A stretch of DNA of 64,000 bases, taken from NCBI GenBank assembly GCA_036785375.1, contig JAWMAR010000353.1:2418001-2482000 (forward strand). The letters run 5' to 3'. Made by a program: the position numbers and the translations under genes. The DNA is from Leucoraja ocellata (taxonomy: Eukaryota). Under the pieces are notes generated by a model, which worked only from the letters and a program-made list of their open reading frames with translations, made no database searches and was not told where the DNA came from. Positions 29,271-56,234 of the stretch are shown piece after piece (within the stretch, counting starts at the first letter, position 1; each line of letters opens with the position of its first letter).

Positions 29271-29948
29271 AGCCAAGGAAATACCGGTCATTCATGGATC
29301 TGGGTTTAATCTCCAGTTCCCATCTCCTTCAGTGAGACCATAAGACATGGGACAGAATTAGGCCATTCGGTCCATCGCGCTGCTGCACCATTCGAACATG
29401 GCTGATCTACCTTTCCCTCTCAATCCCATTCTCTTCCCTTGGATGATACAGCACAGAAACAGGCCCTTCGGCCCAATTGTCGCATTCTGGTATTTTATTT
29501 AATTCACATGTTTAAACTACAATGATTCATTCATTAATTGTCACTGCATGTGGTGTTGTTACTGGCGAGCGGAGCACCAAGGCAAATTCCTTGTATGTGT
29601 ACATACTTGGCCAATAAATGTATTCATTCATTCATTCATCCACTTGCCCATGGAGGACCAAGATGCTCCATCTACACTAGTCCCTCCTGCCCACGTTCCG
29701 CCCCTTTCCCTTGACCATCCACCTATCAACCTCTGCTATAAACATACCCACTGACTTGTGGCCTCCACAGCCTTCTGTGGAAATTAATTCCACAGATTCA
29801 CCACTCTCTGACTAAAGAAATTCCCCTTCCGAAAAGATCATAATGTAATCTTGAGGCTGTGGCCTCTAGTCCTAGACTTTCCCACTGTTGGAGATATCCT
29901 CTCCACATCCACTCTATCCAGGCCTGTCACTGTTGGTGCAGTTTCAAT

Positions 29949-29981
29949 CAAAGATCCTAGAGGAGCAAGATAGACCACTCC
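29949..29981 (+). mobile_element. DNA transposon terminal inverted repeat (left-type end)
   Basis: CAAAGATCCTAGAGGAGCAAGATAGACCACTCC is the reverse complement (3 mismatches) of 33297-33329. Confidence 0.7.
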
Positions 29982-30077
29982 TTCGAAATCCAATGGACTG
30001 GCGTGTAGTACGTGACAGAACGTCACGGCCGCCATTTTTCAATGCGACACGCGACTTCCACCCGCTGTGATCCAAAG

Positions 30078-30108
30078 CAAAGATTATAGAGCTCCGCTAT
30101 AATCTTTG
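30078..30108. mobile_element. 31-bp TIR-tip hairpin with a perfect 8-bp TSD (ATCCAAAG)
   Basis: 12-bp arms CAAAGATTATAG/CTATAATCTTTG; TSD at 30070-30077 and 30109-30116. Confidence 0.85.
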
Positions 30109-30618
30109 ATCCAAAGCAAAGATCCTCGAGTATCTTGTAGCGGGAACAGCCCCCTCCTTTGCGTAGTTTCCCTTGCATTGTATTGCTTTAACACACACTG
30201 CACAAAATTAAATTTAACGTATACATATTATATATATTTATATGAATGTGTGTCTGTGTGTGAGAGGCAAGTTAGAGATAATTAAGTTTATTCTCATGGA
30301 TCAGAAGCAACTTTGATTTAAATAATCACTATTAATGTATTTGTCTTGTAAGATGATATACATAAACCATAAAGGNNNNNNNNNNNNNNNNNNNNNNNNN
30401 NNNNNNNNNNNNNNNNNNNNNNNNNNNNNNNNNNNNNNNNNNNNNNNNNNNNNNNNNNNNNNNNNNNNNNNNNNNNNNNNNNNNNNNNNNNNNNNNNNNN
30501 NNNNNNNNNNNNNNNNNNNNNNNNNNNNNNNNNNNNNNNNNNNNNNNNNNNNNNNNNNNNNNNNNNNNNNNNNNNNNNNNNNNNNNNNNNNNNNNNNNNN
30601 NNNNNNNNNNNNNNNNNN

Positions 30619-31790
30619 GTAGAGGAACCAACGAGAGAGCAGGCTATTTTAGACTGGGTATTGAGTAATGAGGAAGGGTTAGTTAGCAATCTTGTTGTAC
30701 GTGCCCCCTTGGGCAAGAGTGACCATAATATGGTTGAGTTCTTCATTAGGCAGGCAGTGACTAGTGGGGTACCTCAAGGCTCAGTGCTGGGACCCCAGCT
30801 ATTTACAATATATATTAATGATCTGGATGAGGGAATTGAAGGCAATATCTCCAAGTTTGCGGATGACACTAAGCTGGGGGGCAGTGTTAGCTGTGAGGAG
30901 GATGCTAGGAGACTGCAAGGTGACTTGGATAGGCTGGGTGAGTGGGCAAATGTTTGGCAGATGCAGTATAATGTGGATAAATGTGAGGTTATCCATTTTG
31001 GTGGCAAAAACAGGAAAGCAGACTATTATCTAAATGGCGGCCGACTAGGAAAAGGGGAGATGCAGCGAGACCTGGGTGTCATGGTACACCAGTCATTGAA
31101 AGTAGGCATGCAGGTGCAGCAGGCAGTGAAGAAAGCGAATGGTATGTTAGCTTTCATAGCGAAAGGATTTGAGTATAGGAGCAGGGAGTTTCTATTGCAG
31201 TTGTACAGGGTCTTGGTGAGACCACACCTGGAGTATTGCGTACAGTTTTGGTCACCAAATCTGAGGAAGGACATTATTGCCATAGAGGGAGTGCAGAGAA
31301 GGTTCACCAGACTGATTCCTGGGATGTCAGGACTGTCTTATGAAGAAAGACTGGATACACTTGGTTTATACTCTCTAGAATTTAGGAGATTGAGAGGGGA
31401 TCTTATAGAAACTTACAAAATTCTTAAGGGGTTGGACAGACTAGATGCAGGAAGATTGCTCCCGATGTTGGGGAAGTCCAGGACAAGGGGTCACAGCTTA
31501 AGGATAAGGGAGAAATCCTTTAAAACCGAGATGAGAAGAACCTTTTTCACATAGAGAGTGGTGAATCTCTGGAACTCTCTGCCGCAGAGGGTAGTCGAGG
31601 CCAGTTCATTGGCTATATTTAAGAGGGTTAGATGTGGCCCTTGTGGCTAAGGGGATCAGAGGGTATGGAGAGAAGGCAGGTACGGGATACTGAGTTGGAT
31701 GATCAGCCATGATCATATTGAATGGCGGTGCAGGCTCGAAGGGCCGAATGGCCTACTCCTGCACCTAATTTCTATGTTTCTATGTTTCTA
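30619..31790 (+). mobile_element. CR1 LINE with an internal deletion and (TTTCTATG)n tail
   Basis: Endonuclease end (KSDHNMVEF) fused to SGVPQGS of the RT; tail at 31769-31790. Confidence 0.95.
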
Positions 31791-32315
31791 TTATTTTCCA
31801 ACGATCAATAAATTTACGATCAGTTCCTGTGGATTGGAGGATAGCTAATGCTATCCCACTTTTCAAGAAAGGAGCGAGAGAGAAAACGGGGAATTACAGA
31901 CCAGTTAGCCTGACTTTGGTGGTGTGAAAGATGCTGGAGTCAATTATTAAAGATGTAATAATGGGGCATTTGGATAGCAGTAAAATGATTAGTCCAAGTC
32001 AACATGGATTTATGATTTTACAATGCATTTAAGCCTCTCCCATTTTTATGAGATGAATTCCTGGAATATGTAGGAAGTTTATTGTAACCTAGTGCTACTT
32101 GCCTGAACAATGGATGATATATCACTTAAATGCAATTGTTTTCAGTTGTGTGGAGAGACCTGTATATTGAAAATGCGTTTTGCCTCTAATATGTCAATTT
32201 ACCTTAAATGTAGAAGAGCTTATTAAAATCTTCTTACAAAGACCATTAAGTATTTTCTATCTATCCTCTTTTGGACCCAAGGCATGGCAGAGCTGCCAAC
32301 TCTCACGAAGAGGTA

Positions 32316-32590
32316 AGGGGGGGAGAGATGGAAGGGAGGGAGAGAGGAAAGGGAGGGAGATCGCGAAGAGAGGGGGGAGAGAGATCGAGAGAGATCGAGA
32401 GAAGAGAGGGGAGCGAGAGATCGAAAGGAGGGGAGAGAGAGATCGAGAGAAGAGAGGGAGAAGGGGGGAGAGAGAGAAGGGGGAGAGGGAGAAGGGGGGG
32501 GAGAAGGGGAAAGGGGGGGACAGGGAGAAGGGGGGAGGGAGAAGGGGGACAGGGACAAGGGGAAGAGGGAGAAGGGGGAGAGGGAGAGTG
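32316..32590. repeat. Polypurine (GA/G-rich) low-complexity tract
   Basis: Direct reading. Confidence 0.9.
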
Positions 32591-32631
32591 GAACGATAGC
32601 ACATTATAACGCACAGCCGTCCCATTCCGAC

Positions 32632-32743
32632 CAAAGATTATAGAGCAGAGCTCCACTAGTATCTTTGATTGCGGCCGCCGCCACCGAACCCCCCGACCCA
32701 CCATTGCACCCAAAGATGATAGAGCAGAGTTATATAATCTTTG
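32632..32743. mobile_element. Two TIR-tip hairpins (32632-32667 and 32711-32743) with 8-bp TSDs
   Basis: Flanks are ATTCCGAC/ATTGCGGC for the first and a perfect ATTGCACC/ATTGCACC for the second. Confidence 0.85.
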
Positions 32744-33296
32744 ATTGCACCCTTCTTCATGGCGGGCTTGTGATCTTTGCTTGTGATGTCTCGACAATTC
32801 GAGGGACATAACGGGTAACAGCCACCGCCTTCCTTCCCGGACACGAATCTGAGCTCGAAAAATCTCCTGGTCACTGGGCCTAATGTGTCCCGCGGGCCAT
32901 ATTGTGGAGACCAATCCCTTACAAGATCAAAACCAAAAACCCAAAGAAGTGTTAAAATTATTGTCTTTATTATTGTGATGAGTAAAGATATATTAAAAAT
33001 AAGTCTAATAACTTTCTAATGTACCAACAAACCCAGTTTCCCAATGGCCGTTGAGGGGAGAACAGAAAATAACATTTTCACCACAGAATAGCGACTGAAA
33101 ATAATAAAAATATTTTCTCACGTTTCTTTTTTATAGCGGGAACCTAAAGAATGACAGGTCGGGTTGTTTAGATTTACGATTAGAATACTTGATAGCAGAG
33201 CAGTGAGATGAAATTTAGATAAGGACGTCATGACAGTGTGGGGGAAGCCCAATAAATGCGTCGACGATCACACACGTGATACTACGCGTTTTTCCA

Positions 33297-33329
33297 GGAG
33301 TGGTCTATCTTGCTTCTCTATAATCTTTG
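33297..33329 (-). mobile_element. DNA transposon terminal inverted repeat (right-type end)
   Basis: Reverse complement of 29949-29981. Confidence 0.7.
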
Positions 33330-33755
33330 CTCCTGTGGGGAGGAGAGGAGAGGAGAGGGGAGCGGTCACTGGGAGAGTTGGTCCAGCGGCCAGTAACCCC
33401 AACCCGGCCCAGCACCCAGTGCCCAGCAACCTGAACCATCCCCTCCAATCCCAATCCCCCCCTTAACTCCCCCCCCCCCCCCCATCGCTCGCACCCCAAG
33501 GGAAGAAATGGGCGGGGAGAGGGGGTTTGTAGGGAGTGGGCCGGGAGGGGGGGAGGAAGAGAGAGGGGTGGGGGCTGGTCCGCGGGAGTTGGCGGGAAAG
33601 GGAGGGGGAGATGGTGAGAGGGGAGGAGGCGAGGTCAGGGTGGGGAGAGGGGAGAGTAAGGAGTGGGCCGGGCAGGGGGGAGGGAAGAGAGAGAGGGGAG
33701 CGGGAGGGGGGAGAAGGGAGGAGGGGAGTGGGAGACGGTGGGAGGGGGGACTCAC

Positions 33756-33869
33756 CTCGATGACCCGGTCCCGTTGGGCCTCGTTCACCTTCCCTGCCAG
33801 GCAGCAGTAGCGCGTTGTGCAGGATCAGCCGTTTGGACTTGGTGCTCGGCTCCTTGAACAGCTTTAGGC
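33756..33869 (-). pseudogene. CAMSAP: Orphan CAMSAP-family CKK-domain exon with a 5-nt deletion
   Basis: GLKLFKEPSTKSKRLILHNA/YCCLAGKVNEAQRDRVIE matches the CAMSAP GPKLxKEPSxKSN...HCCLAGKVNE motif; flanked by CAG and GTGAGT splice sites. Confidence 0.85.
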
Positions 33870-34394
33870 CTGGGCGGGGGGGGGGGGGGGGGGGGGCAAG
33901 GGGTCAAACAGCCGAACCCCCGCCCCCTCCTCCGACCCTTCCACTCAACACGCCCCCCCCCCCCCCCCCATATCCCCGCACGCCCCCGTATGTATATGTA
34001 TATTACGAGTAGAGTATTTTGCTGTACCCCTTCCCCTGTCTCTTTCTACGGAGGGAGCAGAGGGAAGCATGAGAACGAAGAAGTGTCCAGACCCTAGACG
34101 TGTTCTGTCATTTCCTTACACGTGTGTTGCCTGACCCACGGACTTCCTCCAGCAGTTTGTTTTTATTTCTCACCGTTTACCCGCTTCCCGTCCACTTCCA
34201 CCCCAATTAGGAAACTCCATGAAACATGTTTTAGTCCATGGGATGTTGGTGGGTGGGAAAACGCCGGGATATCGTCCAGTTATCCGCCCGCCTGTGCCTG
34301 AGGCTGAGCGGCCTCTCCCCCGGTCCCGGGGCCGCGCTGCCCGAGTCTCCCCCCGACCCCCGGGGACTCTCTGATTCTCTGCTTCTCCCCCCAG

Positions 34395-34927
34395 TCTCCG
34401 TCACCCTGGATGTGGAAACAGCGAATCCAGAGCTCGAGGTGTCTGAGGATCGGAAGAGGGTGAGACGGACCTGGACCGGGAGGAGTCTCCCTGACACCGG
34501 GAAGAGGTTTACAGTCTGGCCGTGTGTGCTGGGATCGGAGGGATTCACATCGGGGAGACATTACTGGGAGGTGGAGATGGCGGGGAGTCGGCGCTGGAGG
34601 CTGGGAGTCGCCGCAGAGTCTGTGGAGAGGAAGAGATGGGTCCCACTGACCCCGGAGACTGGAGTCTGGAGCATCGAGCAGTGGGGTGACGGGTTTCATG
34701 CATTCACCACCCCTCCATTCCCTCTCCCCGCCCGTCCCATCCCCGGGAGGGTGGGAGTTTATCTCAGTTACGAGTCTGGGACAGTTTCATTTTACAACGC
34801 GGACACCAAGTCCCATCTCCACACCTTCACTGGGAATAAATTCACAGAGAAACTTTATCCTTTCTTCAGGAATTGGGATTTAAACAAGTGGCTGAGAATC
34901 TGCTCAGGTTCCGCTCCGGGTGTGTAA
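34395..34927 (+). CDS. B30.2/PRY-SPRY terminal exon (TRIM- or butyrophilin-type)
   Basis: Pyrimidine tract and CAG acceptor; VTLDVETAN, CVLGSEGFTSGRHYWEV, RVGVYLSYESGTVSFYN, LYPFF; TAA stop; AATAAA near 35074. Confidence 0.93.
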
Positions 34928-35121
34928 AAGGGTCGGGTCCCGGGACCGGCGTCAGAAGCGGGGCTCAGGGGCTGTGGGGCAGAAACCCGGTGGACAACAG
35001 GTCGGCGCTGAACGAACGGCTCCCATTTAATTCCCAAATTCCGCGTCGTGAAACAAACCCCAGTGAGCGCGGAAATAAAACCAGGGGGAATGTAAATGTG
35101 GCCTTGCCGAGGCAGCATGAA

Positions 35122-35464
35122 GTGTAGATGTGTACAAAATCATGAGAGGAACAGATCGGGTAGATGCACAGAGTCTCTTGGCCAGAGTAGGGGAATCGAG
35201 GACCAGAGGACATAGGTTCAATGTGAAAGAGATAAGATATCTGAGGGGTAACTTTTTCACACAGAGGGTGGTGGGTGGATGGAACAGTAGTTGGGGCTGG
35301 GACTATCCAATCGTTTATGCAACATTTAGACAGGTACATGGATAGGACAGATTTGGAGGGATATGGACCAAGCGCAGGCAAGTGGGACTAGTGTAGATGG
35401 GACATGTTGGCCGGTGTAGGCAAGTTGGGCCGAAGGGCCTGTTTCCATACTGTATCACTCTATG
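35122..35464 (+). mobile_element. CR1 3' end fragment
   Basis: YKIMRGTDRVD..ESRTRGH..FFTQRVV followed by 3' UTR. Confidence 0.85.
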
Positions 35465-35663
35465 ACCAAGAGTCAATGGAAGGGGAGGTTGGTTTGCGCG
35501 ATGGTCTGGGCTGTGTGCACAGTTCTCAACTGTCGCTCATCCCTCCTCTCCATAGATGCTGCCTGTCCAGCTGAGTTACTCCAGCATTCTGTGTCCTTCT
35601 TCAATGTAAACCTGCATCTGCAGTTCCTTCCTACAGATAAAATGCTTTCTGCGGCGCAGTACT

Positions 35664-36126
35664 AGTGTGATACAGTGTGGAAACAGGCCCTTCGGCCCAA
35701 CTAGCCCATAGAAGCCAACATGCCCCATCTACCCTAGTCACAGAGTGTTATAGTGTGGAAACAGGCCCTTCGGCCCTACTTGCCCATACTAGCCAACATG
35801 CCCCAGCTACACTAGTCACAGAGTGATACAGAGTGGAAACAGGCCCTTCAGCCCAACTTGCCCATACTAGCCAACAATGTCCCAGCTACACTAATCAGAG
35901 TGATACAGAGTGGAAACAGGCCTTCGGCCCAACTTGCCCATACTAGCCAACAATGTCCCAGCTACACTAATCAGAGTGATACAGAGTGGAAACAGGCCCT
36001 TCGGCCCAACTTGCCCATACTAGCCAACAATGTTCCAGCTACACTAGTCACAGAGTGATACAGTGTGGAAACAGGCCCTTCAGCCCAACTTGCCCACACC
36101 AGCCAACATGTCCCATCTACACTAGT
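35664..36126 (-). repeat. Tandem array (~6 x 78 bp) of the CR1 3' terminus
   Basis: Unit is the reverse complement of 35385-35462. Confidence 0.9.
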
Positions 36127-36324
36127 CTCAACAAAGCTCTTGTGGCGACCCCTGGTGGTGAGCCACGCACTGTACATAACCTTCGGCTCTGGGTAGACAA
36201 TAGACAACAGGTGCAGGTCCAGGCCATTCGGCCCTTCATGTCCTGACCAGAGGTGGTGGTCACGGGTGCCCCTGGGGTTATTTAAGGTGGTAATCACGCG
36301 CGCGCACACGGGGTGGTGGGTTTT

Positions 36325-36517
36325 TATATATTTTTATTTTTTATTACACAAATACTTTTATTCAAAAACTACAAATAAAGATACAGTATTAACACAATCA
36401 AAGGCTGCCTATGTTGACAGTTCATCAAATTAATATGATGCCAACTTGATCAACAAACACACGACCTCCCGCGGCGACCAGCATTCACGGACGGTCTCCA
36501 GAGTCCCCGTGGACACC
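36325..36517 (-). mobile_element. Tx1/L1-like 3' end with A-rich tail
   Basis: VSTGTLETVRECWSPREVVC C-terminus resembling 43427-43490. Confidence 0.55.
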
Positions 36518-36677
36518 TCGTGTGTGTTCCCTCTCCACACACTGATGGTAACAACAGTGAGGTGAAACTGCATCCTTCACTCTGCAACTGTGCTCTCTGC
36601 CAGCTTCCATCCGTTGCTGTACCCTCAGCCACTGGTCCCCCTCCTAGACACACACTCACACACACACACATATATAG

Positions 36678-37555
36678 TCAAGTCAAGAGAGTTTATTGTC
36701 ATGTCTCCCAGATAGGACAATGAAATTCTTGCTTGCTGTAGCACAACAGAATATAGTAAGCATAAATACAGAACAGTTCAGTGTGCCTATATAGCATAGA
36801 CCATATATACACACATAAATAAACAGATAAAGTACAATAGGCTGTTATAGTTCAGAGTTTGTTTGAGTTGAGTTTAATAGCCTGATGGCAGTGGAGAGAT
36901 GAGTGTGTGGCCAGGATGGTGTGGGTCCTTGATGATGCTGCCAGCCTTTTTGAGGCAGCAACTGCGATAGATCCCTTCGATGGTGGGGAGGTCAGAGCCG
37001 ATGATGTACTGGGCAGTGGTCACAACTTTCTGCATTCTTTTCCGCTCCTGGACGTTGAAGTTGCCGAATCAAGCCACAATGCAACCGGTCAGCATGCTCT
37101 CTACTGTGCACCAGTAGAAGTTAGAGAGATTCCTCCTTGACAAACCAACTCTCCGTAATCTTCTCAGGAAGTAGAGGCGCTGATGTGCTTTCTTTACAAT
37201 TGCATCAATGTGCTGGGACCAGGAAAGATCTTCAGAAATATGCACACCCAGGAACTTCTTGACTCTTTCCACCATATAAACGGGATTGTGGTTCCCTATC
37301 CTACCCCTTCCAAAGCCCACAATCAGTTCCTTGGTGTTGCTGGTGTTGAGAGCCAGGTTATTGTGCTGGCACCATTTGGTCAATAGGTCGATCCCACTTC
37401 TATACTCTGACTCGTCCCCATCAGTGATTCGTCCCACAACAGTAGTGTCGTCGGCGAACTTGATGATGGAGTTCGCACTATGACTGTCTACACAGTCATG
37501 AGTATAGAGTGAGTACAGCAGGGGGCTGAGCACGCAGTCTTGAGGTGCTCCCGTG
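36678..37555 (-). mobile_element. Rex1/Babar LINE RT C-terminus and 3' tail
   Basis: [42 protein letters not shown]. Confidence 0.9.
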
Positions 37556-37782
37556 TGTGTATACACACNNNNNNNNNNNNNNNNNNNNNNNNNNNNNNNN
37601 NNNNNNNNNNNNNNNNNNNNNNNNNNNNNNNNNNNNNNNNNNNNNNNNNNNNNNNNNNNNNNNNNNNNNNNNNNNNNNNNNNNNNNNNNNNNNNNNNNNN
37701 NNNNNNNNNNNNNNNNNNNNNNNNNGAAACACAAGTAAATATATATGTATACGCACACACACAGTCGCACAAACACATATTT

Positions 37783-40700
37783 AAACTAATGTGGCAGGGG
37801 GATGGGTACAAGAGCAGAGAGGCAGGGGGGTGTAAAATGAGGGTAGAAGAAAGAGGTAGCAAGGTGCAAAGTAAAAGTGGCTGGCAGACAAAACCAGGGC
37901 AAAAATCAAAAAGGGCCACTTCTCAACATAATTGTATAAGGGGTAAGAGAGTTGTAAGCCTGAAGGCTTTGTGTCTCAATGCAAGGAGTATTCGTAATAA
38001 GGTGAATGAGTTGAACGTGCAGATAGCCATTAATGATTATGATATAGTTCGGATCACGGAGACATGGCTCCAGGGTGACCAAGGCTGGGAGCTGAACATC
38101 CAGGGATATTCAATATTCAGGAGGGATAGAGAGAAAGGAAAAGGAGATGGGGTAGCATTGCTGGTTAGAGAGGAGATTAACGCAATGGAAAGAAAGGACA
38201 TTAGTTTGGAGGATGTGGAATCGGTATGGGTAGAGCTGCGAAACACTCAGGGGCAGAAAACGCTGGTGGGTGTTGTGTACAGGCCACCTAACAGTAGTAG
38301 TGAAGTTGGAGATGGTATCAAACAGGAAATTAGAAATGCGTGCGACAAAGGCAAAACAGTTATAATGGGTGACTTCAATCTACATATAGATTGGGTGAAT
38401 CAAATTGACAGGGGTGCTGAGGAAGAGGATTTTTTGAAATGTATGCGGGATAGTTATCTAAATCAACATGTAGAGGAACCAACGCGAGAGCTGGCTATTT
38501 TAGACATAGTATTGAGTAATGAGGAAGGGTTAGTTAGCAATCTTGTTGTACGTGCCCCCTTGGGCAAGAGTGACCATAATATGGTTGAGTTCATCATTAG
38601 GATGGAGAGTAACATTGTTAATTCAGAAACAATGGTTTTGAACTTAAAGAAAGGTAACTTTGAGGGTATGAGACGTGAATTGGCCAAGATTGACTGGCAA
38701 TTAATTCTAAAAGGGTTGACGGTGGATATGCAATGGAAGACATTTAAATACTGCATGGATGAACTACAAAAATTGTTCATCCCAGTTTGGCAAACGAATA
38801 AATCAGGGAAGGTAGTGCATCCGTAGATAACAAGGGAAATCAGGGATAGTATCAAAGCGAAGGATGATGCGTACAAATTAGCCAGAAAAAGCAGCATATC
38901 GGAGGACTGGGAGAAATTCAAAGACCAGCAGAGGAGGACAAAGGGCTTAATTAGGAAAGGGAAAATAGATTATGAAAGAAAACTGGCAAGGAACATAAAA
39001 ACTGACTGCAAAAGCTTTTATAGATATGCGCAGAGAAAAAGATTAGATGTAGGTCCCTTGCAGTCAGAAACAGGTGAATTGATCATGGGGAAAAGGACAT
39101 GGCAGGCCAATTGAAAACTACTTTGGTTCTTTCTTCACGATGGAAGACATAAATAATCTGCCGGAAATAGCAGGGGACCGGGGGCCAAATGAGATGGAGG
39201 AACTCCAGGTTAGTCGGGAAGTGGTGTTGGGTAAATTGAATGGATTAAAGGCCAATAAATCCCCAGGGCCAGATAGGCTGCATCCCAGAGTGCTTAAGGA
39301 AGTAGCCCCAGAAATAGTGGATGCGTTAGTGATAATTTTTCAAAATTCTTTAGATGATGGAGCAGCTCCTGAGGATTGGAGGGTAGCTAATGTAACCCCA
39401 CTTTTTAAAAAGGGAGGGAGAGAGAAAACAGGGAATTACAGACCAGATAGTCTAACATCGGTAGTGGGGAAACTGCTAGTCAGTTAATAAAGATAGGATA
39501 GCAACACATTTGCAAAGTGGTGAAATCATTGGACAAAGTCAGCATGGATTTATGAAAGGTAAATCATGTCTGACGAGTCTTATAGAAGTTTTTGAGGATG
39601 TAACTAGTAGAGTGGACAAGGGAGAACCAGTGGATGTGTTATATCTGGACTTTCAGAAGGCTTTCGACAAGGTCCGACATAAGAGATTAGTATACAAACT
39701 TAAAGCACACGGCATTCAGGGTTCAGTATTGATGTGGATAGAGAACTGGCTAGCAGACAGGAAGCAAAGAGTAGGAGTAAACGGGTCCTTTTCAGAATGG
39801 CAGGCAGTGACTAGTGGGGTACCACAAGGCTCAGTGCTGGGACTCCAGCTATTTACAATATATATTAATGATTAGGACGAGGGAATTGAATGCAACATCT
39901 CCAAGTTTGCGGATGACACGAAGCTGGGGAGCAGTGTTAGCTGTGAGCAGGAGGCTAGGAGGCTGCTCGGTTACTTGGATAGGTTGAGTGAGTGGGCAAA
40001 TGCAGGGCAGATGCAGTATAATGTGGATAAATGTGAGGTTATCCACTTTGGTGGCAAAAACAGGAAAGCAGACTATTATCTGAATGGTGGCCGATTAGGA
40101 AAAGGGGGAATGCAACGAGACTTGGGTGTCATGGTACATCAGTCATTGAAAGTAGTACTTTCCTGAAGCAGAAAGTCCAGCATCTGCACTTCCTTCTTGA
40201 ACACATTGAAAGTAGGCATGCATGTGCAGCAGACAGTGAAGAAAGCAAATGGCATGTTAGCATTCATAGCAAAAGGATTTGAGTATAGGAGTAGGGAGGT
40301 TCTACTGCAGTTGTACAGGGCCTTGGTGAGACCACACCCGGAGTATTGTGTACAGTTTTGGTCTCCTAATCTAAGGCATAGAGGGAGTACAGAGAACGTT
40401 CACCAGACTGATTCCTCGGATGGCAGGACTTAAATATGCTGAAAGACTGGATAGACTCAGCTTGTACTCGCTTAGAAGATTGAGGGGGGATCTTATAGAA
40501 ACTTACAAAATTCTTAAGGGGTTGGACAGGCTAGATGCAAGAAGATTGTTCCCGATGTTGGGGAAGTCCAGAACAAGGGGTCACAGTTTAAGGATAAGGG
40601 GGAAGTTTTTTAGGTCCGAGATGACAAAAAAGATTTTCACACAGAGAGTGGTGAATCTGTGGAATTCTCTGCCACAGAAACTAGTTGAGGCCAGTTAATT

Positions 40701-40876
40701 GGCTATATTTAAGAGGGAGTTAGATGTGGCCCTTGTGGCTGGAGGGATCAGGGGATATAGAGAGAAGGCAGGTACAGGATACCGAGTTGGATGATCAGCC
40801 GTGATCATATTGAATGGCGGTGCAGGCTCGAAGGGCTGAATGGCCTACTCCTGCACCTATTTTCTATGTTTCTATG
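37783..40876 (+). mobile_element. Near full-length CR1 ORF2 (APE endonuclease and RT), with stops and frameshifts
   Basis: LNARSIRNK, ITETWL, GDFN, SDHN and RT motifs; TTTCTATG tail at 40861. Confidence 0.96.
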
Positions 40877-41606
40877 ATTCCTATTAAATCGTTTCCCCTT
40901 CACCTTAAAACTGTCCTCTGTTCCTCGATTCACCTACTCGGGGCATTGAAATTGATATATCTAATGCATTTTAGATTTCTCAAAAGTGTTACTTTAAAAA
41001 AAGTAACGTTTCTACAAACATATACCCCTTTATTAATGTCATGGTTTGATGATTCTCAATTCAAATCAAAATGAAATATACGTCAAAATGAGAATGCATA
41101 CTTTCAAAATACTCAGATTCCGTGCAACACATAATTTGTATAACTTTGCAAAGTCAGGAAATGTTATGATTATTTCTTCTCCCTTTTTACAACTACAAAC
41201 AAAAAAAAAGCACTTGAAATTATAACACAATTAAAAGTCAAATTGTCTGTACCGTGGAAGGCACTGGCGTCGATCTGGGGGAGCGGAGGGGGGGGGGGGG
41301 GATATATCCCCCACACTTTTTGAGGTGGGGAATGGCCTGTATTATTATTACCCAGTTTTTGGAGGTCGAGCAATAACAAAAATAATAATCACCTCCTCCT
41401 ATCTCTTGAGGGCTCTGCATTTTCTTAAATATACTTCAAACAAAAACCATTGAAATCATACTTCACAATGCACTAAAACATGATTTTAATACATCAAATT
41501 TCAAAAAGTCCCAACCGTGGGATGGGGGGCTCCCTCGTCCTACAACCTCCCCCCCAATGCTTCAAAATCAAGTGGTCGAGTTTTATTGCCATATATTCTC
41601 AAGAAT

Positions 41607-41900
41607 AGAAATATAGGAAATAGGTGCAGGAATAGGCCTTACGCCCTATCGAGCCAGCACTGCCATTCAATATGATCATGGCTATTCATCTAAAATCAGT
41701 ACCCCTTTCCTGTTTTTTCCCCATATCCCCTGCTTTTGCTAGCTGCAACAGCTAAATGTAACTCTCTCTGGAAAACATCCAGTGAATTGGCCTCCACTGC
41801 CTTCTGTGGCAGAGAATTCCACAGATTCACAACTCTCTGGGTGAAGAAAGTTTGTCCTCATCTCTGAACTCCCCCAACACCGGGAACACTTTTCCTGCAG
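41607..41900 (-). mobile_element. CR1 3' end fragment
   Basis: 3' UTR similar to the other CR1 copies. Confidence 0.8.
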
Positions 41901-42000
41901 ATAGTGTGAAAATCCTGCAGACAAGCAGGATGCCTTCTCCATCCATCCCCATTTGAAGTCCACTATATTCCACCGCTTCTATCCAGTGTTTGGTACCTAC

Positions 42001-42147
42001 TTCCAGCAGCCACTGGTTGTCCTCCAGGATGAACCGAGCCGCAGCCTGTTCTATGCCGGTCACCAGGGTGAATTGGGCGCAGAGACTGTCACGGCAGCGG
42101 CACAATGCCTCAGACGGCCCGGGACTCTTGCACTGAGACTGCTCCAT
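42001..42147 (-). pseudogene. TDP2: TDP2 exon-1-like segment (N-terminal UBA-like domain); no downstream exons seen
   Basis: RDSLCAQFTLVTGIEQAAARFILEDNQWLLE followed by a GTAGGT donor, resembling TDP2 LCVEFASVASCDAAVAQCFLAENDWEME. Confidence 0.7.
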
Positions 42148-42536
42148 GGCCGGAGCTGCAGCGAGCGACTCGCCAGCCCGGCAAACACTCGCCAGCCCCG
42201 GCTCCCCGTCCGCATCTGCCCCCCTCCGCTGCTTCTGCTTCCATCCATCCCTCCCTCATCCTCGGCTCTCCAACACCCACGACCAGGTTGTTCAGAGCAC
42301 AGCAGCTGCAGCCCCCGGTTCCGCGGCCCGTGTCCATTTCTCTGGACTCCATCTGCCATGATTCTCAGTCTGAAAATGGATCTCGACCCGAATCATCACT
42401 CTGTAGCGGGACCTATTGGTTAAACTGTGTATTAGAGAAATTAGTGTCTGAAGAAGGGTTTCGGCCTGAAACGTTGCCTTTTTCCTTCGCTCCATAGATG
42501 CTGCTGCACCCGCTGAGTTTCTCCAGCACTTTTGTA

Positions 42537-42558
42537 CAAAGATCCTCTAGGATCTTTG
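42537..42558. mobile_element. 22-bp TIR-tip hairpin with 8-bp TSD inside a Penelope tail
   Basis: CAAAGATCCT-CT-AGGATCTTTG flanked by CTTTTGTA/CTTTTGTT. Confidence 0.8.
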
Positions 42559-42603
42559 CTTTTGTTTACCTGTGTATTAGAAAACCCTCGTCAGAGGCCG
42601 GGT

Positions 42604-42617
42604 CTGTCACGTGACAG
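42604..42617. promoter_or_regulatory. Palindromic E-box CTGTCACGTGACAG upstream of the TDP2-like exon
   Basis: 14-bp perfect palindrome with a GTCACGTGAC (USF/MiT-type) core in CpG-rich DNA. Confidence 0.4.
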
Positions 42618-42869
42618 GGTTGGCGCGCGGGCTTTTGGCAGTTGGTGTTTGACGGTTGGCAGTTGACGGTTGGTGATTGACAGTTGACGGTTGGTGTTTG
42701 AAGGTTGACAGTTGGTCCTCTACGCGTTAACAAGAGCTCAGAAACGGTTTTCCCTCGACCAGATACCCGTGCAGTTTAAATGTTGTTTTTACAATAAAAC
42801 TATTTGACTCTACCCGTGTGGTATCGCTACAACCTATTCCTTCTCTCCAACACATGCTGCCTGTCCCGC

Positions 42870-43395
42870 TACATTGGTCACCCCGTCGGCCCTAACGTTT
42901 TCGGACCCGCTGTTATGGACGCAGCCGGTGACCTCGACGCCAACCCGGCCCAGCTAAACGTCAAGGCCTCAAGCATGGTTCCTGCAAATCCAGCCCAGTT
43001 GCAGGTCGGACACAGTTACATTGCCGCCGGTTTAACCAGGTATTTCTACATGGATCAAGGAACCTCTCCTTACCTCTAACAAGCGCCGGCCGAAGGCAAG
43101 TACGAGGGCCTCCAGGATCCTGCACATGGACGGCCTCGGTGTGAACTGATGAACGAAATGTTGTCGCTGATGGACGGTGACCGGCCTCGTCTTGTCTTTG
43201 ACCAGGCGTTCGGCAGCGACCCCCTTCACCGGCCCCCCTGCAAGTCGCCGAGGGAGAGGACGAGCTGTGACAAGACAAGCAGCAACATAGCGACGCTTCC
43301 ATCAGCCGGGTATCTGCGGCTCCACCATTCATTCCACCGACAACACAACGATGCAACCGGCAGCAGCGGATACCGGTAAGTGTCTGACAGTCTTG
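42870..43395 (+). mobile_element. Gypsy-type LTR retrotransposon, PBS plus degenerate gag fragment
   Basis: CA-TTGGTCACCCCG PBS-like site; PQAWF, LTRYFY, LHMDGLG, MNEMLSL motifs. Confidence 0.65.
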
Positions 43396-43426
43396 GTCCT
43401 CATTCCTACCAAAGATTAGGAATGTT

Positions 43427-43625
43427 CACCCTGAGGGAGTTTCCGCGACCGCTGGGCACCGAGTGGGGGTTGAATGTATCCTGGACAAGGATTGTAATAT
43501 ACTTGTTTAGTAGCTGCTTAGCATATTTGTTTGTCTTGTATTATGGTGGTGTTTTGTTTTACTGTATTGGAAATACTATTTTCATATTTGAATAAATATT
43601 TTTGATTAAAAAATATATTAAAAAA
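43427..43625 (+). mobile_element. Tx1/L1-like 3' end with a 12-bp TSD (ATTAGGAATGTT)
   Basis: TSD at 43415-43426 and 43626-43637; AATAAA and A-rich tail. Confidence 0.8.
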
Positions 43626-44640
43626 ATTAGGAATGTTACAACATTTTAAGATTTAAACAAACCAAGCCTGTCATTTATTCCATCATATAAAGTTGAAAAA
43701 GGACTTTAATTTGACACCTAATTCACTTTCATATTTTAAGTATTAAAACAGTTATGGCCATTTGCATACTGGGAAATTAGCATCTTGTCCCCTATTGCTT
43801 TTCCATTCACTTAACACAAAAGCTGTGATCGAGGACAGTCAAAAGCCCATAACTTTATTAAAAATTAACAGAACTGTGAAATGTTCAGTTATTATAGATT
43901 GAAGCATTCTGGAAACAAGCATCCTTACTTGGATGGCCTGAAATTAAAGTATATAATTAGTTAATTACCTAATTAAGTAGCATGATTCGGGAGGGGCTGC
44001 TCGTTTTGTGCGGTTTTTCACTTGCACGCGTTAGTTCAGTGCTGACCACCGCTGTGGGCAGATGTGTCTGGAGAACCTGTATACTGGATATCAAACTTTT
44101 GTATAAAGATCTGTTGAAAACTCCAGTAGTCGTTTCTCAGACCACTAAAAGCTAATTACAAAATTACCCGTTGTGACGGAAATAGTAATAAACGCCCAGA
44201 CTGTCTTGAAAATTGAAAAATGTAATATTCTCAAGATCAGAACTTTAATATTATTGTAACATTAACACGAATAGTAAATACCCAACAAAAAATTCATATT
44301 CATCAGTCATCAAATCAATTAAATTCATCTAAATTAAATTACTAGATCTAAACATCTATCCCATTCTTAAGAAAAGGCTACAAATAATTTTTAAATAGCC
44401 AAAGTGTCCAAACAACAAACTAATCCCATTCACACAGGAATTCACAATATAAACTGATTTTTAAATCTCACTTTGTCATGAATTTCTATGCCAAATGTAA
44501 GGAATTGAATGTTTAATTACCATAAATTTTACTCTTTCTCACTGCAGCGGGCAGGGGCCGTTTTATACAGACATTTGTTCAAAATCCAGAAACATCCACT
44601 CTCGAGATAATCAAAATAATTATTTTTTGCACATGTCGGA
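43626..44640. repeat. Unclassified AT-rich interspersed-repeat-like segment
   Basis: Non-coding, AT-rich, hosts other insertions; family not determined. Confidence 0.35.
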
Positions 44641-44684: not shown

Positions 44685-45485
44685 ACAAATAATCCTCCAA
44701 CATTTTCGCCACCACCAACAGGATCCCACCACTGGCCACATCTTCCCATCTCCTCCCCTGTCTGCTTTTCGCAAAGACCGCTCCCTCCCGAACTCCCTGG
44801 TCAATTCGTCCCTTCCCACCCGAACCACAGCCTCTCCTGGCACTTTCCCTTGCAACTGCAAGAAATGCTACACTTATCACTTTACCTCTCCCCTTCACTC
44901 CATTCAAGGACCCAAGCAGTCTTTCCAGGTTGGACAGAGGTTCACCTGCACCTCCTCCAACCTCATCTGTTGCACCCTCTGCTATAGATGTCAGCTGCTC
45001 TACATCGGTGAGACCAACTGTAGGCTTGGCGATCGCTTTGCCCAATACCTCCGCTCGGTTCGCAATAACGAAACCTGATGTCCTGGTGGCTCAGCACTTC
45101 AACTCCCCCTCCCATTCCCAATCCCTGACCTTAGTGTCCTGGGCCTCCTCCATGGCCAGAGTGAGGCCCGCCATAAATTGGAGGAGCAGCACCTCATATT
45201 TCGCTTGGGCAGTTTACACCCCAGCGGTATGAACATTGACTTCTCCAATTTCAGGTAGTCCCTGCTTTCTCCTCCTCTTCCCAGCTCTCCCTCAGCCCAC
45301 TGTCCCCGCCTCTTCCTTTCTTCTTCCCCCCCCCCTCCCCACCCTCACATCAATCTGCGGAAGGGTCTCGACCCGAAACGTTGCCTGTTTCCTTAGCTCC
45401 ATAGATGCTGCTGCCTCACCCGCTAAGTTTCTCCAGCATTTTTGTCTACCTTTGATTTTCCAGCATCTGCAGTTCCTTCTTAAAC
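44685..45485 (+). mobile_element. Penelope-like element 3' fragment (GIY-YIG)
   Basis: Highly similar to 14130-14802. Confidence 0.88.
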
Positions 45486-47880: not shown

Positions 47881-48049
47881 CGTTGAAAGAATTCGTTCCT
47901 TGGTTTCACCTGGAAACTGAACATCGAGATAATGTTTAAATGGGTAGCACTACCGCACTGAAATTAAGTCCATGAACTAACTCTATGCATTCTATGTTTA
48001 ATATATTTTTATTAGAAGCATGTATACAAATAGCTGTAAGCGACAATAT

Positions 48050-49146
48050 AATAGTAAGATTAAACGAGAACTTACCAGTTTGAAGTTTGATCTGTATTTT
48101 ATGAGGAGTTACGATGAGGGATTACGTGAAGAACCCGCCTCAGGACGCATGTGCGGCATACTTCAAAGCAGCGGTGTGGAATCACAGATAGACACAAGTA
48201 TTTGAAGTAACATAGTAAAGAAAATAGAGACATCAATTTATCAGTTTGATCCATATAATGAGGGTGGGAGCGGAGGGCACGTAATCCCTCATCGTAACTC
48301 CTCATAAAATACAGATCAAACTTCAAACTGGTAAGTTCTCGTTTAATCTTACTATTTTACTTCGGAGTCACGTGAGTGACTACGTGAAGATTTCAAAGCT
48401 CTGTGATTTCAAACCGTGTAACAGCTATTACTACACCACTGCCGAAGTCTTTGAGGGAGGAAGTGTGTTATCGTAATCAGCCAATGAATCTGTTTATAGA
48501 AAAACACAATGGTATTTTTACAATAACAATGAAGAAATTTAAATGCTCCCCTGGACTAATTTAAATATTTGCAGATTGGAATCTTTCCTGCAAATAAAAA
48601 ACAAGTTTTGTCAACAGTTTATAATAAATTCTTTCTCTGAACGTTTTACCCCCACCATTCTGCTGTAGCCAGGATGTGGTTTATAGGCACGTCCATTCTT
48701 TTGCTGTTGACGTGGAAGCTTGTCCTGTGGAATGAAAAACTTTGTACATCTACTCGAGGGGCGAGCGAGGACTGAGGGGAACCTCCAACGAGTGCAAGCT
48801 CCGTCTTCCCATTGTCGCCCCTGTGGAGTGGTACCGGCACCGGCACAGCTCCCAGTCCATGGTCCACCGTGTGTGCGGTCCTGGTGGCGTCTTTCCCCCC
48901 CCCCCTCCCGCGAACGGAACACTCCTTCCCCGGAGTCCAAGGGGGCCGCTTGCATGCCCTGCGGGGAACAAGCAGACGCGAGGGGCTGTTAAAATAAAGG
49001 TAAGTACTTACCTAAAGCTTAGTTTTTCTGGTTGTTGCGGGAGCCCTGTCTCCCGCCTGCCGCTGTTGCCTGCTGAAACGTAATGCCGCACATGCGTCCT
49101 GAGGCGGGTTCTTCACGTAGTCATTCACGTGACTCCGAAGTAAAAT
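48050..49146 (-). mobile_element. Miniature non-autonomous DIRS1-like element with inverted termini and ICR
   Basis: Inverted repeat 48123-48159/49083-49119; ICR 48278-48390 complementary to both ends; recombinase C-terminal remnant KRMDVPINHILATAEW. Confidence 0.92.
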
Positions 49147-51981: not shown

Positions 51982-53517
51982 AGTTGCTGCCTCACAGAGA
52001 CCCGGGTTCGATCCTGACTACGGGTGTTGTTTGTACGAAGTTTGTACGTTCTCCCCGCGACCGCGTGTGGTTTCTCCGAGTGCTCCGGTATTTTCCCACA
52101 ATCCAAAGACGTGCAGGTTTGTAGATAATTGGCATCATGAAAATGTGTAAATTCTCCCTAGTCTGCAGGGTCGTGCTGGTGTACACGGTGATCTCTGGTC
52201 GTCGCGGACATGGTGGGCTGAAGGGGCCGTTTCCATGCTGTATCTCGAAAGTACAATCTAAAGTCTCTCCATTGGGCACGTGGTGTATGGAAGTAACTGA
52301 ATTATTTTATTTTCATATTAATGATATTTGGAAACTCTCCGGGAATATTCTTTATGCCCTATAACATCACAGTGTCAAACAATGTAAATGCCCCCATTCG
52401 CTGTGGAAAGTATTCCCCGGACACTGTGGGAGCAACGTTCATGATTGCAACAACCACTTCAGTCCACGTACAGATCTTGTGTATGAGAGATATTACATAA
52501 TCTTGTGTTAGAAAGTTCCTCTACTAGTCCTACTGTTCCCGCCTACATTCTATCTGTGTCCCATCCCCTCCCTCGACATCAGTCTGAAGAAAGGTCTCGA
52601 CCATAAACGTCACCTATTCCTTCTCTCCATAGATGCTACCTGTCCCGCTGAGTTACTCCAGCATTTTGTGTCTATCTTCCACTGACCGATCTTCCCCACA
52701 CATTGACCGTCACCTTCCCCTCAGCTCCCCTGCTGTACCACCTGAAGCCACTCTGGGAATGTCCTCACTCGGCTTCTGTCAACAAGAATCCACAGTGTCC
52801 AGGCCGTGCCCTTGTCTCACTGCTAACGTCGGGTAGGACGTGTAGAAGACTGAATTCCCACACCGTCAGGTTCAAATACAGCTTCAACCCCACAACTATC
52901 AGGTTCTTGAACCGACCCGCACACCCATAGTCCCACCTCAGTATTTACAGAACCATATCACCAGAGGACTATGGTCCAATATAAATACTGAGGAAGCGCA
53001 TCGAACAAATTAACGATTGGACGTGCCGAAACTTTCTTCAATGAAACGAAGACAAAAGGGTGGAAATTGTTTGTATAAAGCACTGAATGATCTAGGGCCA
53101 AAATACATCTCTGATTTTCTGCTACAAGGTTGACGAGTTCCCGCTCAGACTCTCCTGTGCTGGGGATGAGTGGGAAATAGAGGCCAAAAATGTCGGGTCC
53201 ACATCGGATAAAACAGGGGGAGAGAGAAACAGGAGCTAATGAGAGAGCAGAGACCCGGGAGATATTGTTCACTCTTTATTCCTCTGGACAATATCATCTC
53301 ACCCCGTGAATATTTTTTATTGTCCCGGCATCTTTTGACTTCAGAAATATTTTCTGTCCTTTGACAGGTTTGATGATGGGTGACTGAAGAAATTCCCGGG
53401 AGAAGATTTGTCCCAGACCTGGCCCCCTTGACGGGAGACTCAAGGAGCAGATTGTAAAGGGAGCCGGGATCCCGGTGCGGAGCCTGGAGTCCTTTGGCCA
53501 CCGGTTGCCCTTGGCCA

Positions 53518-55782: not shown

Positions 55783-56234
55783 GTGAGTAAGTAAAACATC
55801 GATGATTGACGATAAATGTAAAACGAACAGATTGTAAAGAGCGTTCACTCAACAATGTAGATTTATAATTACATAATTAACAACTTGCTGCTGTTGTAAT
55901 GTTTATATTGAGAAGTAACTTGAGTAAATGGAGAAAGGGTTTCATCCCGAAACCTTGCCTGTTTCCTTCGCTCCATAGATGCTGCCTCACCCGCTGTTTC
56001 TCCAGCATTTTTGTCTACCTTTGAGTAAATGAAGGGCAGCCATGGGAATGTATTTAACTGGAGTTCCATCACATCTGTCCCAGTGTTTTTCATTGAGGGG
56101 AATGGAGAATGGATGTAGGGAAGGTGCATCACAGTTGTACAGGATGTTGTTGAGATCTCACCTGGGACACAGTGTACAGTCTTTGTCTCCTTACTGAAGG
56201 AAAAATGTACTTGCCATGTGCAGCATATATGTAC

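What the first reader, a model, noticed from the sequence alone, without database searches (positions are those of the whole stretch)
30070..42566. Family of 22-36 bp TIR-tip hairpins with 8-bp TSDs: probable P-element-type excision footprints
Seen: five tiny CAAAGAT..ATCTT(T)G inserts. They are 30078-30108 (perfect TSD ATCCAAAG), 30117-30137 (degenerate, no clear TSD), 32632-32667 (TSD 6/8), 32711-32743 (perfect TSD ATTGCACC) and 42537-42558 (TSD 7/8). Each consists only of the outer ~10-18 nt of the longer terminal repeat seen at 29949 and 33329. Established: Drosophila P transposase makes 8-bp TSDs and cuts 17 nt into each end, so repaired donor sites keep about 15-18 nt of both TIRs, whereas hAT excision leaves flank-derived rather than TIR-derived palindromes. 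Inference: these are fossil footprints of a once highly active P/THAP9-like transposon in a jawed vertebrate. Their clustering near CpG-rich, promoter-like DNA fits P-like targeting and local hopping.
Basis: partly seen in the sequence, partly recalled or inferred. Interest (0 to 1): 0.85.

Follow-up and report, generated by a model that had tools for sequence, protein, structure and literature searches.

The report
Tiny transposon-end relics resembling P-element footprints
Five 21-36 bp inserts made only of the two tips of a DNA transposon, mostly flanked by 8-bp target duplications, look just like the scars that P elements leave on excision, but four of them lie inside a high-copy repeat and were copied along with it.

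Summary
Four exact CAAAGAT..ATCTTTG mini-palindromes (expected 0.02) and one degenerate one lie at the stated places. Their 8-bp flanks match 8/8, 8/8, 7/8 and 6/8. A 34-nt terminal repeat sits at 29949 and 33329. An unbiased scan for short inverted inserts with 8-bp duplications finds only this family. The 42537 insert is a proven insertion: 4 of 4 in-window paralogs of its host repeat run through the site.

Each insert is a left tip of 6-14 nt, 0-5 filler letters and a right tip of up to 17-18 nt. That is the architecture and size range of published Drosophila P-element excision junctions, and it does not fit hAT or MULE excision.

Public contigs show that all of 29949-30375 and 32006-33329 is high-copy repeat. 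Copies run collinearly through inserts 1-4, so these were inherited with a repeat. They are not independent hits in promoter DNA. The junctions fall into two recurrent classes.

No transposase is in the window, so P-superfamily membership is inferred, and the tip also fits the hAT motif.

First-stage notes list similar inserts on four other pieces of this genome, plus candidate THAP-bearing P elements; I could not check these.

Verdict: probable P-type excision relics, moderate interest.

The parts
29949..29982 (+). Long terminal inverted repeat, left-type end (34 nt). It is the start of a high-copy repeat.
   Evidence: A contig (X19 record 17, depth 1847) begins exactly at 29949.
33296..33329 (-). 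Long terminal inverted repeat, right-type end (34 nt, 91% complementary to 29949-29982).
   Evidence: Beyond nt 34 the two ends do not align, so they are different end types.
29983..30375 (+). Internal part of the high-copy non-autonomous repeat that carries inserts 1 and 2. It runs into the N gap.
   Evidence: summed word depth is 1e5-4e5 in all bins. Collinear contigs cover 30063-30179, 30121-30236, 30163-30260, 30199-30308 and 30255-30357.
30070..30116 (+). Insert 1: TSD ATCCAAAG, a 31-bp TIR-tip palindrome (30078-30108; left 14 nt + right 17 nt) and TSD ATCCAAAG.
30117..30137 (+). Insert 2: a degenerate 21-bp relic directly after insert 1's right TSD, with no TSD of its own. It is the same junction type as insert 5, with 3 changes.
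   Evidence: One search gives 90% identity over 20 nt to 42537-42556.
32624..32675 (+). Insert 3: TSD 6/8 and a 36-bp relic (32632-32667; left 14 + CAGAG + right 17).
32703..32751 (+). Insert 4: TSD ATTGCACC 8/8 and a 33-bp relic (32711-32743; left 14 + CAGAG + right about 13-14). It shares filler and flank similarity with insert 3.
   Evidence: (family D5).
42529..42566 (+). Insert 5: TSD 7/8 and a 22-bp relic (42537-42558), inserted into a copy of a roughly 90-bp interspersed repeat.
   Evidence: (4 of 4 paralogs are uninterrupted at the site).
32006..33295 (+). Right-hand internal part of the high-copy repeat. It contains a GA-rich microsatellite (32300-32600) and inserts 3 and 4.
   Evidence: multi-contig coverage and many places where nearly all other copies carry another letter. 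One search shows the GA-rich families.
30619..32005 (+). LINE fragment (RT ORF 30661-31554) lying between the two parts. It is not part of the family.
   Evidence: RVT_1, E 8e-12. One search shows depth in the millions.
32767..32787 (+). Doubtful sixth relic: CTTGTGAT + CTTTG + CTTGTGAT. It may be only a 13-bp tandem duplication.
   Evidence: With 2577 such 8-bp repeat pairs outside the satellite, chance is not excluded. One X1 contig skips 32760-32791 (table 5).

Best explanation
The five inserts are immobile relics left where copies of one cut-and-paste transposon family (34-nt TIRs, 8-bp TSDs) once sat and were excised. The transposase cuts with a long 3' stagger, about 17 nt as in P elements. 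Each donor flank therefore keeps its TSD plus up to about 17 nt of TIR as a single-stranded tail. End joining of the two tails, blunt, at short microhomology or with a few templated filler letters, gives TSD + tip + filler + tip + TSD. Shown here: the anatomy, the 8-bp TSDs, the arm limit of 17-18 nt, and one proven insertion site. Inferred: the staggered cut and the P-superfamily identity. Four of the relics formed inside a non-autonomous copy of the same or a related family and were then multiplied with it to roughly thousands of copies. Inserts 3 and 4 are in addition a local duplicate pair. Only insert 5 is a separate event in this window.
For: The motif pairs are far above chance (4 against 0.02; the only family found by an unbiased scan). 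The 8-bp TSDs are 8/8 twice, 7/8 and 6/8. Insert 5 interrupts a repeat whose 4 of 4 in-window paralogs read straight through, with 7-8 bp duplicated. Arms measured against the two long TIRs are 14+17 for insert 1, 14+CAGAG+17 for insert 3 and 14+CAGAG+13/14 for insert 4. Insert 5 equals the product of pairing TIR positions 7-10 (TCCT) with positions 13-16 (AGGA) of two identical tails, which needs at least 16 nt of single strand on both sides. No arm exceeds 18 nt. Published P{wa} excision junctions (PMC2895639 section 9; 48 isolates in two tables) have the same layout: intact 8-bp TSDs, 4-17 nt per arm and 0-49 filler letters. By my hand count from those tables, most are 20-46 bp. They include recurrent junctions (one type in 5 of 23 and 7 of 25 isolates) and imperfectly templated fillers, compare CAGAG next to TAGAG here. 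The 17-nt stagger, 31-bp TIR and 8-bp TSD of P are stated in PMC7776569. hAT, MULE and Transib form hairpins on flanking DNA and release whole ends (PMC5499845). Mobility of 22-36 bp units is unlikely, since Drosophila P needs 138 bp and 216 bp of its ends (PMC1562414 passage). High copy number and collinear copies through inserts 1-4 are shown. Unchecked leads from first-stage notes on other pieces of this genome report more 29-40 bp TIR-only inserts and a P element with 34-bp TIRs, 8-bp TSD and a THAP transposase.
Against: No transposase is linked to these TIRs by any of my calls. The tip CAAAG fits the hAT terminal motif YARNG, and all four TSDs have T at position 2 as in the hAT target consensus; both motifs are recalled, not tested. 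The junctions are not freely variable. Inserts 2 and 5 are one 22-mer type, and inserts 1, 3 and 4 share the left-14/right-17 layout. Inserts 3 and 4 share the same 5-nt filler and similar flanks, so the number of independent events in the window is about 3, not 5. Position 13 of the right arm departs from the TIR in both insert 1 and insert 3. At 30096 nearly all depth in run X1 carries the window's variant, while run X19 carries the canonical letter. This shows inheritance within an amplified unit rather than repeated fresh events. The two long ends have no common TSD (1/8). With only 64 kb I cannot show that longer arms are absent genome-wide.
Confidence: 0.55

Rival explanations
1. The family is a hAT (or another 8-bp-TSD superfamily with unknown chemistry, such as Merlin or Zisupton). 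The minis are extreme internal-deletion derivatives made in place by aborted gap repair from the sister copy followed by end joining, not by a staggered transposase cut.
For: The tip CAAAG fits YARNG, and T sits at TSD position 2 in 4 of 4 cases (motifs recalled; TSDs). hAT is among the most widespread superfamilies in fish genomes, whereas few DNA transposons were found in elephant shark (PMC6817897 passages). Synthesis-dependent repair plus end joining is the stated source of internally deleted P copies (PMC2895639 passage) and could act on any family.
Against: All ten arms are 18 nt or less. Aborted synthesis should give a broad spread of arm lengths, yet the unbiased scan up to 60 bp found no insert longer than 33 bp with a TSD of at least 7/8. 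The relaxed scan up to 400 bp added only a rejected 367-bp pair. A 34-nt TIR is long for hAT (recalled). hAT excision hairpins usually damage the TSD-proximal flank, whereas two TSD pairs here are perfect.
Confidence: 0.2
2. The minis are themselves mobile micro-MITEs (a 22-bp class and a 31-36-bp class) that a transposase moves and amplifies.
For: There are two recurrent sequence classes at sites with different TSDs. Sequences like insert 1 have very high summed depth in four runs.
Against: Neighbouring bins have equal or higher depth, and contigs are collinear across the insert borders. The copy number therefore belongs to the larger repeat. No large pile of loose ends at the insert borders appears among the rows shown, although 4804 further rows were not shown. 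A 22-36 bp duplex cannot plausibly present two separate ends to a transpososome (inference). Drosophila P needs 138 and 216 bp of its ends. Recurrent junctions also arise from independent excisions.
Confidence: 0.12
3. The palindromes are built-in modules of the repeat, such as subterminal pseudo-ends or transposase-binding or enhancer sites. Their TSD-like flanks would come from local duplication.
For: Inserts 1-4 are internal to a high-copy unit and conserved in length in other copies. Inserts 1 and 2 lie about 130-190 nt from the left end. [quoted passage not shown]
Against: Insert 5 is an independent insertion in unrelated DNA with empty paralogous sites. Two perfect 8/8 flanking repeats are not expected for built-in modules. 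In most other copies the right tip of insert 4 is mutated (32739 C>A in 44160 of 66216 depth in X1), so there is no sign of constraint.
Confidence: 0.08

Closest known systems
Drosophila P-element excision footprints (end-joined donor sites after the 17-nt staggered cut)
   Same: The layout is TSD(8) + up to 17 nt of TIR + 0-n filler + up to 17 nt of TIR + TSD(8). The size range is the same, and both show recurrent microhomology junctions and imperfect templated fillers.
   Different: These relics are fixed in a vertebrate genome and old (arms and TSDs carry substitutions). Four of five were propagated inside a repeat. The transposase is not identified and the TIR sequence is unrelated to the fly TIR.
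Vertebrate P-like elements (zebrafish Pdre2 / THAP9)
   Same: The host is a vertebrate and TSDs are 8 bp (PMC10983969 passages).
   Different: Pdre2 has 13-bp TIRs with a different sequence and 12-bp subterminal repeats about 400 bp inside. In the passages I read, excision by zfTHAP9 gave larger deletions than the fly enzyme. No natural footprint class was described there.
P-MITEs of Anopheles and BuT5 of Drosophila
   Same: They are non-autonomous, high-copy derivatives with P-type ends and 8-bp TSDs, like the repeat that hosts inserts 1-4 (listing only for BuT5).
   Different: Those are hundreds of bp to about 1 kb long and mobile. The 21-36 bp inserts here are far below any known mobile size.
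hAT elements and hAT-derived MITEs
   Same: TSDs are 8 bp and the terminal motif is YARNG-like (recalled).
   Different: hAT excision leaves flank-derived footprints without TIR tips. A 34-nt TIR is long for hAT (recalled).

Membership tests
P superfamily transposon | 8-bp target site duplication | tested here: met
   Flanks match 8/8, 8/8, 7/8 and 6/8. The insert 5 duplication is confirmed against 4 of 4 paralogous empty sites.
P superfamily transposon | Transposase with an N-terminal THAP domain and the P-type RNase H catalytic domain with GTP-binding insertion | tested here: inconclusive
   No such ORF is in the window. Pfam was run on 10 of the 57 ORFs of at least 130 aa and gave only RVT_1 and PRY/SPRY. 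Short ORFs in 32600-33330 show nothing obvious.
P superfamily transposon | Long (about 17 nt) 3'-staggered donor cleavage, read from the footprints | tested here: met
   The longest arm is 17-18 nt in inserts 1, 3 and 5, and none is longer. This is indirect, since it rests on relics and not on biochemistry.
P superfamily transposon | About 30-bp TIRs with internal transposase sites at unequal distance from the two ends (9 and 21 bp in Drosophila) | tested here: inconclusive
   The TIR is 34 nt. By eye's sequences, a shared motif CGYGTAGTA lies 19 nt inside the left TIR and 7 nt inside the right TIR, an offset of 12 nt. MAFFT aligned the ends differently, and a 9-mer with one mismatch is near chance expectation.
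hAT superfamily transposon | 8-bp TSD and terminal YARNG motif (motif recalled) | tested here: met
   CAAAG at both tips.
hAT superfamily transposon | Excision through hairpins on flanking DNA, so donor-site footprints lack TIR sequence | tested here: not met
   The relics consist of TIR tips between intact TSDs. The chemistry is from PMC5499845.
MITE (mobile miniature element) | A homogeneous family at many unrelated loci, each with its own TSD, and long enough to be mobilised | tested here: inconclusive
   There are two recurrent classes, but only 3 independent sites in 64 kb. The high depth is shared with the surrounding repeat. A size of 21-36 bp is far below the known requirements.

The most novel reading that the evidence does not exclude
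The 22-bp and 31-36-bp palindromes are not dead scars. They are either the smallest mobile DNA elements known in a eukaryote, moved by a vertebrate P-like transposase, or pseudo-end modules that the high-copy repeat keeps because they recruit or titrate transposase.
Probability: 0.08. Interest if true: 0.8.

Novelty: new member of a known kind. Interest (0 to 1): 0.42.

Why it matters
If the family is P-like, these relics are a natural record that the unusual 17-nt staggered cut, known from fly biochemistry, also operated in a vertebrate P family. They would also show that such a family was once abundant and excising in the germ line. That would make the cleavage geometry of vertebrate THAP9-type transposases testable from genome sequence alone. 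It also has a practical side. Scars of 20-40 bp with TSDs are invisible to repeat maskers and can be mistaken for MITEs. Here they are also carried along inside other repeats, which inflates apparent event counts.

Tried and rejected
I looked for a transposase in the window. Pfam on 10 of the 57 ORFs of at least 130 aa and a reading of short ORFs in 32600-33330 found none.

I looked for other copies of the internal parts within the window and found none beyond the TIRs. I tested whether 29949 and 33329 bound one insertion. The flanks match 1/8. The left flank is an inverted LINE 3' fragment and the right flank is GA-rich, so there is no shared interrupted repeat. This stays unresolved because of the N gap.

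A candidate 367-bp element at 29949-30315 (TSD 6/8) was rejected. Its right end matches the TIR only at the tip, and a depth-313 contig runs through 30315.

The pair CTTGTGAT-CTTTG-CTTGTGAT is kept only as doubtful. The match of 43396-43418 to insert 3's left flank plus tip (E 0.04) is treated as chance.

The link to CpG islands or promoters was tested and not supported.

Pattern scans of metagenome and viral contig collections for the inner TIR were blank, as expected for vertebrate DNA.

Paper searches found no report of fixed P-type footprints in a vertebrate genome. This covers only the held open-access library, and supplements were not seen. PMC1592238 passages held nothing relevant.

The search of earlier findings by sequence was blank. 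One search timed out and was rewritten.

Full report
OBSERVATION. CAAAGAT-N(5-30)-ATCTTTG occurs 4 times (30078-30108, 32632-32667, 32711-32743, 42537-42558). The mean in 100 dinucleotide shuffles is 0.02, and none of them reaches 4. A fifth, degenerate unit lies at 30117-30137. The long repeat is real: 29949-29982 and 33296-33329 are 34-nt inverted arms, 91% complementary.

A scan that does not presuppose the motif gave 4 hits, 3 after removing low complexity. It looked for any 7-nt inverted arms, total length 16-60, with 8-bp flanks matching at least 7/8. All 3 belong to this family, and 20 Markov controls gave 2 hits in total. A relaxed family scan gave 5 hits against a mean of 0.3. One of those, a 367-bp pair, I reject.

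GAPS. No insert touches a gap. The gap at 30376-30618 sits between the left long end and a LINE fragment (RT ORF 30661-31554). Whether 29949 and 33329 bound one element therefore cannot be decided. Their flanks match at only 1/8. I filled no gap and do not repeat the letters that one search listed at a gap edge.

ONE INSERT IS A PROVEN INSERTION. The left flank of insert 5 is a copy of a roughly 90-bp interspersed repeat that has four other copies in the window. In the alignment, 4 of 4 paralogs read straight through the site. The window copy carries the 22-bp insert, with 7-8 bp (CTTTTGTn) present on both sides.

ANATOMY. I measured each insert against the two long TIRs.
- Insert 1 is left 14 nt + right 17 nt, or 13 + 18 with one shared G.
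- Insert 3 is left 14 + CAGAG + right 17.
- Insert 4 is left 14 + CAGAG + right 13-14.
- Insert 5 is the exact product expected if two identical single-stranded tips pair through TIR positions 7-10 (TCCT) and 13-16 (AGGA). This leaves 6+10+6 = 22 nt and needs at least 16 nt of single strand on each side.
- Insert 2 is the same 22-mer type with three changes.

No arm exceeds 18 nt. The filler CAGAG is an imperfect copy of the adjacent TAGAG.

COMPARISON WITH EXPERIMENT. P transposase makes an unusually long 17-nt staggered cut. P has 31-bp TIRs and 8-bp TSDs (PMC7776569 passages; PMC10983969 passages). After excision each donor end keeps a 17-nt non-complementary 3' tail (PMC2895639 passage).

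I read section 9 of that paper in full. It lists 48 sequenced junctions with both 8-bp TSDs intact, 4-17 nt of each TIR and 0-49 inserted letters. One junction type recurs in 5 of 23 and 7 of 25 isolates. Fillers are often imperfect copies of neighbouring letters. By my hand count most lengths are 20-46 bp. The inserts here are 21, 22, 31, 33 and 36 bp.

hAT, MULE, Transib and RAG instead form hairpins on the flanking DNA and release the whole transposon end (PMC5499845 passages). Their scars therefore carry no TIR tips. Drosophila P needs 138 bp and 216 bp of its ends to move (PMC1562414 passage), so 21-36 bp units are unlikely to be mobile.

I laid Logan contigs of four runs from three coded organisms on 29900-33400 at 90% likeness. 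The whole stretch is repeat, not only the LINE.
- Summed word depth is 5e4-4e5 in every bin of 29900-30375 and 32006-33400. Single long pieces have depths of about 4-50. This suggests on the order of thousands of copies, but the tool warns that depth is not a copy number.
- One contig (X19 record 17, depth 1847) begins exactly at 29949, so the TIR tip is the family border.
- Other copies are collinear through the inserts. X15 record 9 covers 30063-30179 (inserts 1 and 2) with 8 mismatches and no gaps. X15 record 14 covers 32618-32731 (insert 3 and the start of insert 4) with 6 mismatches. X1 record 7 (32688-32791) and X15 record 15 (32688-32809) cover insert 4.
- Table 4 lists no indel at any insert, so no empty allele was seen. 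With contigs this does not prove absence.
- At 30096, inside insert 1, nearly all depth in X1 carries the window's non-canonical letter. In X19, 85263 of 85294 carries the canonical TIR letter.
- At 32739 most other copies have a mutated right tip of insert 4.

Inserts 1-4 are therefore old internal features of an amplified non-autonomous repeat. In addition, inserts 3 and 4 share the 5-nt filler and similar flanks (family D5; 51 nt at 78%), so they are a duplicate pair. The window holds about three independent events, not five.

PROMOTER CLAIM. CpG o/e in 500 bp around the inserts is 0.57-0.83. That is the 71st-95th percentile of the window, and none meets island criteria. The CpG-rich flanks of inserts 1-4 are the repeat's own subterminal sequence. 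Targeting of promoters and local hopping are not supported.

WHICH SUPERFAMILY. No transposase is in the window.

For P: the 8-bp TSD, the 34-nt TIR and the scar architecture with its 17-18 nt limit. There is also a weak hint of unequal spacing of a shared subterminal motif, 19 nt against 7 nt inside the TIR. I read this by eye from the sequences, and MAFFT aligned them otherwise. Drosophila P has 9 and 21 bp.

For hAT: the tip fits YARNG, and all four TSDs have T at position 2. Both motifs are recalled, not tested.

First-stage notes on other pieces of this genome list more TIR-only inserts: one of 33 bp with an empty sister site, one of 40 bp, three of 31-36 bp and four of 29-36 bp. They also list a P element with 34-bp TIRs, 8-bp TSD and a spliced THAP transposase. 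I saw titles only and could not test them, so they are leads. The clusters of 3-4 inserts within about 3 kb in those notes would fit the same host repeat.

MECHANISM. Shown: the inserts are TIR tips between 8-bp duplications, one of them at a demonstrably once-empty site. Inferred: a long copy sat at each site and the transposase cut with a stagger of about 17 nt. The tails were then joined blunt (insert 1), with templated filler (inserts 3 and 4) or at a 4-nt self-complementary stretch (inserts 5 and 2). Later the host repeat carrying four scars amplified. I put this at 0.55. The rivals are aborted gap repair in a hAT or other family (0.20), mobile micro-MITEs (0.12) and built-in modules (0.08).

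NOVELTY AND SCORE. P-type scars and P-derived MITEs are known, and P-like elements are known in fish. My seven paper searches found no report of fixed scars of this type in a vertebrate genome. That covers only the held library, without supplements. I class the finding as a new member of a known kind and score interest at 0.42. The anatomy is neat and testable. However, the superfamily is unproven, the events are fewer and older than proposed, and the promoter story fails.

Noticed in passing
window 1-13200: A satellite-like block, nearly free of CpG (o/e 0.0-0.16 in most 1-kb bins). Several reading frames stay open for up to 2517 codons.
   Followed up: no
window 34238-34927 (+): An ORF with PRY (E 4e-19) and SPRY (E 6e-22) domains, that is, a B30.2 exon about 0.9 kb downstream of the right long TIR. 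This agrees with first-stage note s1-885603.
   Followed up: partly
window 14709-14798, 42446-42535, 45354-45445, 52582-52669, 55935-56014: Five copies (81-96% alike) of a roughly 90-bp interspersed repeat, probably a SINE or LINE tail. Its tail contains a chance look-alike of the TIR tip (2 mismatches in 14).
   Followed up: partly
window 30058/30059: Other genomic copies of the left-hand repeat carry a few extra letters here (loose ends in runs X1 and X15). This shows that the repeat continues past this point towards insert 1.
   Followed up: partly
window 30002-30018 and 33280-33288 (-): A shared subterminal motif CGYGTAGTA followed by (C)ACGTG lies 19 nt inside the left TIR and 7 nt inside the right TIR. 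The 12-nt offset recalls the 9/21-bp asymmetry of Drosophila P ends. Statistically weak.
   Followed up: partly
window 32767-32787: An 8-bp direct repeat CTTGTGAT flanks CTTTG, the last 5 letters of the TIR tip, 24 nt after insert 4. One contig of run X1 skips 32760-32791. It could be a sixth, heavily trimmed scar or a plain 13-bp tandem duplication.
   Followed up: partly
window 43396-43418: A 23-nt match (91%, E 0.04) to the left flank plus tip of insert 3, including CCAAAGATTA. It is either a solo tip or chance.
   Followed up: no
window 37540-40700 and 62444-63904: Further LINE copies: an endonuclease/RT ORF of 428 aa that crosses the N gap at 37569-37725, and an RVT_1 ORF of 486 aa (E 2e-34).
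   Followed up: no
window 42000-44000: This is among the most CpG-rich parts of the window (o/e 0.78 in both 1-kb bins; only 48001-49000 is higher, at 0.83). It contains a perfect 14-nt palindrome at 42604-42617. It is possibly a promoter, and insert 5 lies at its edge.
   Followed up: no
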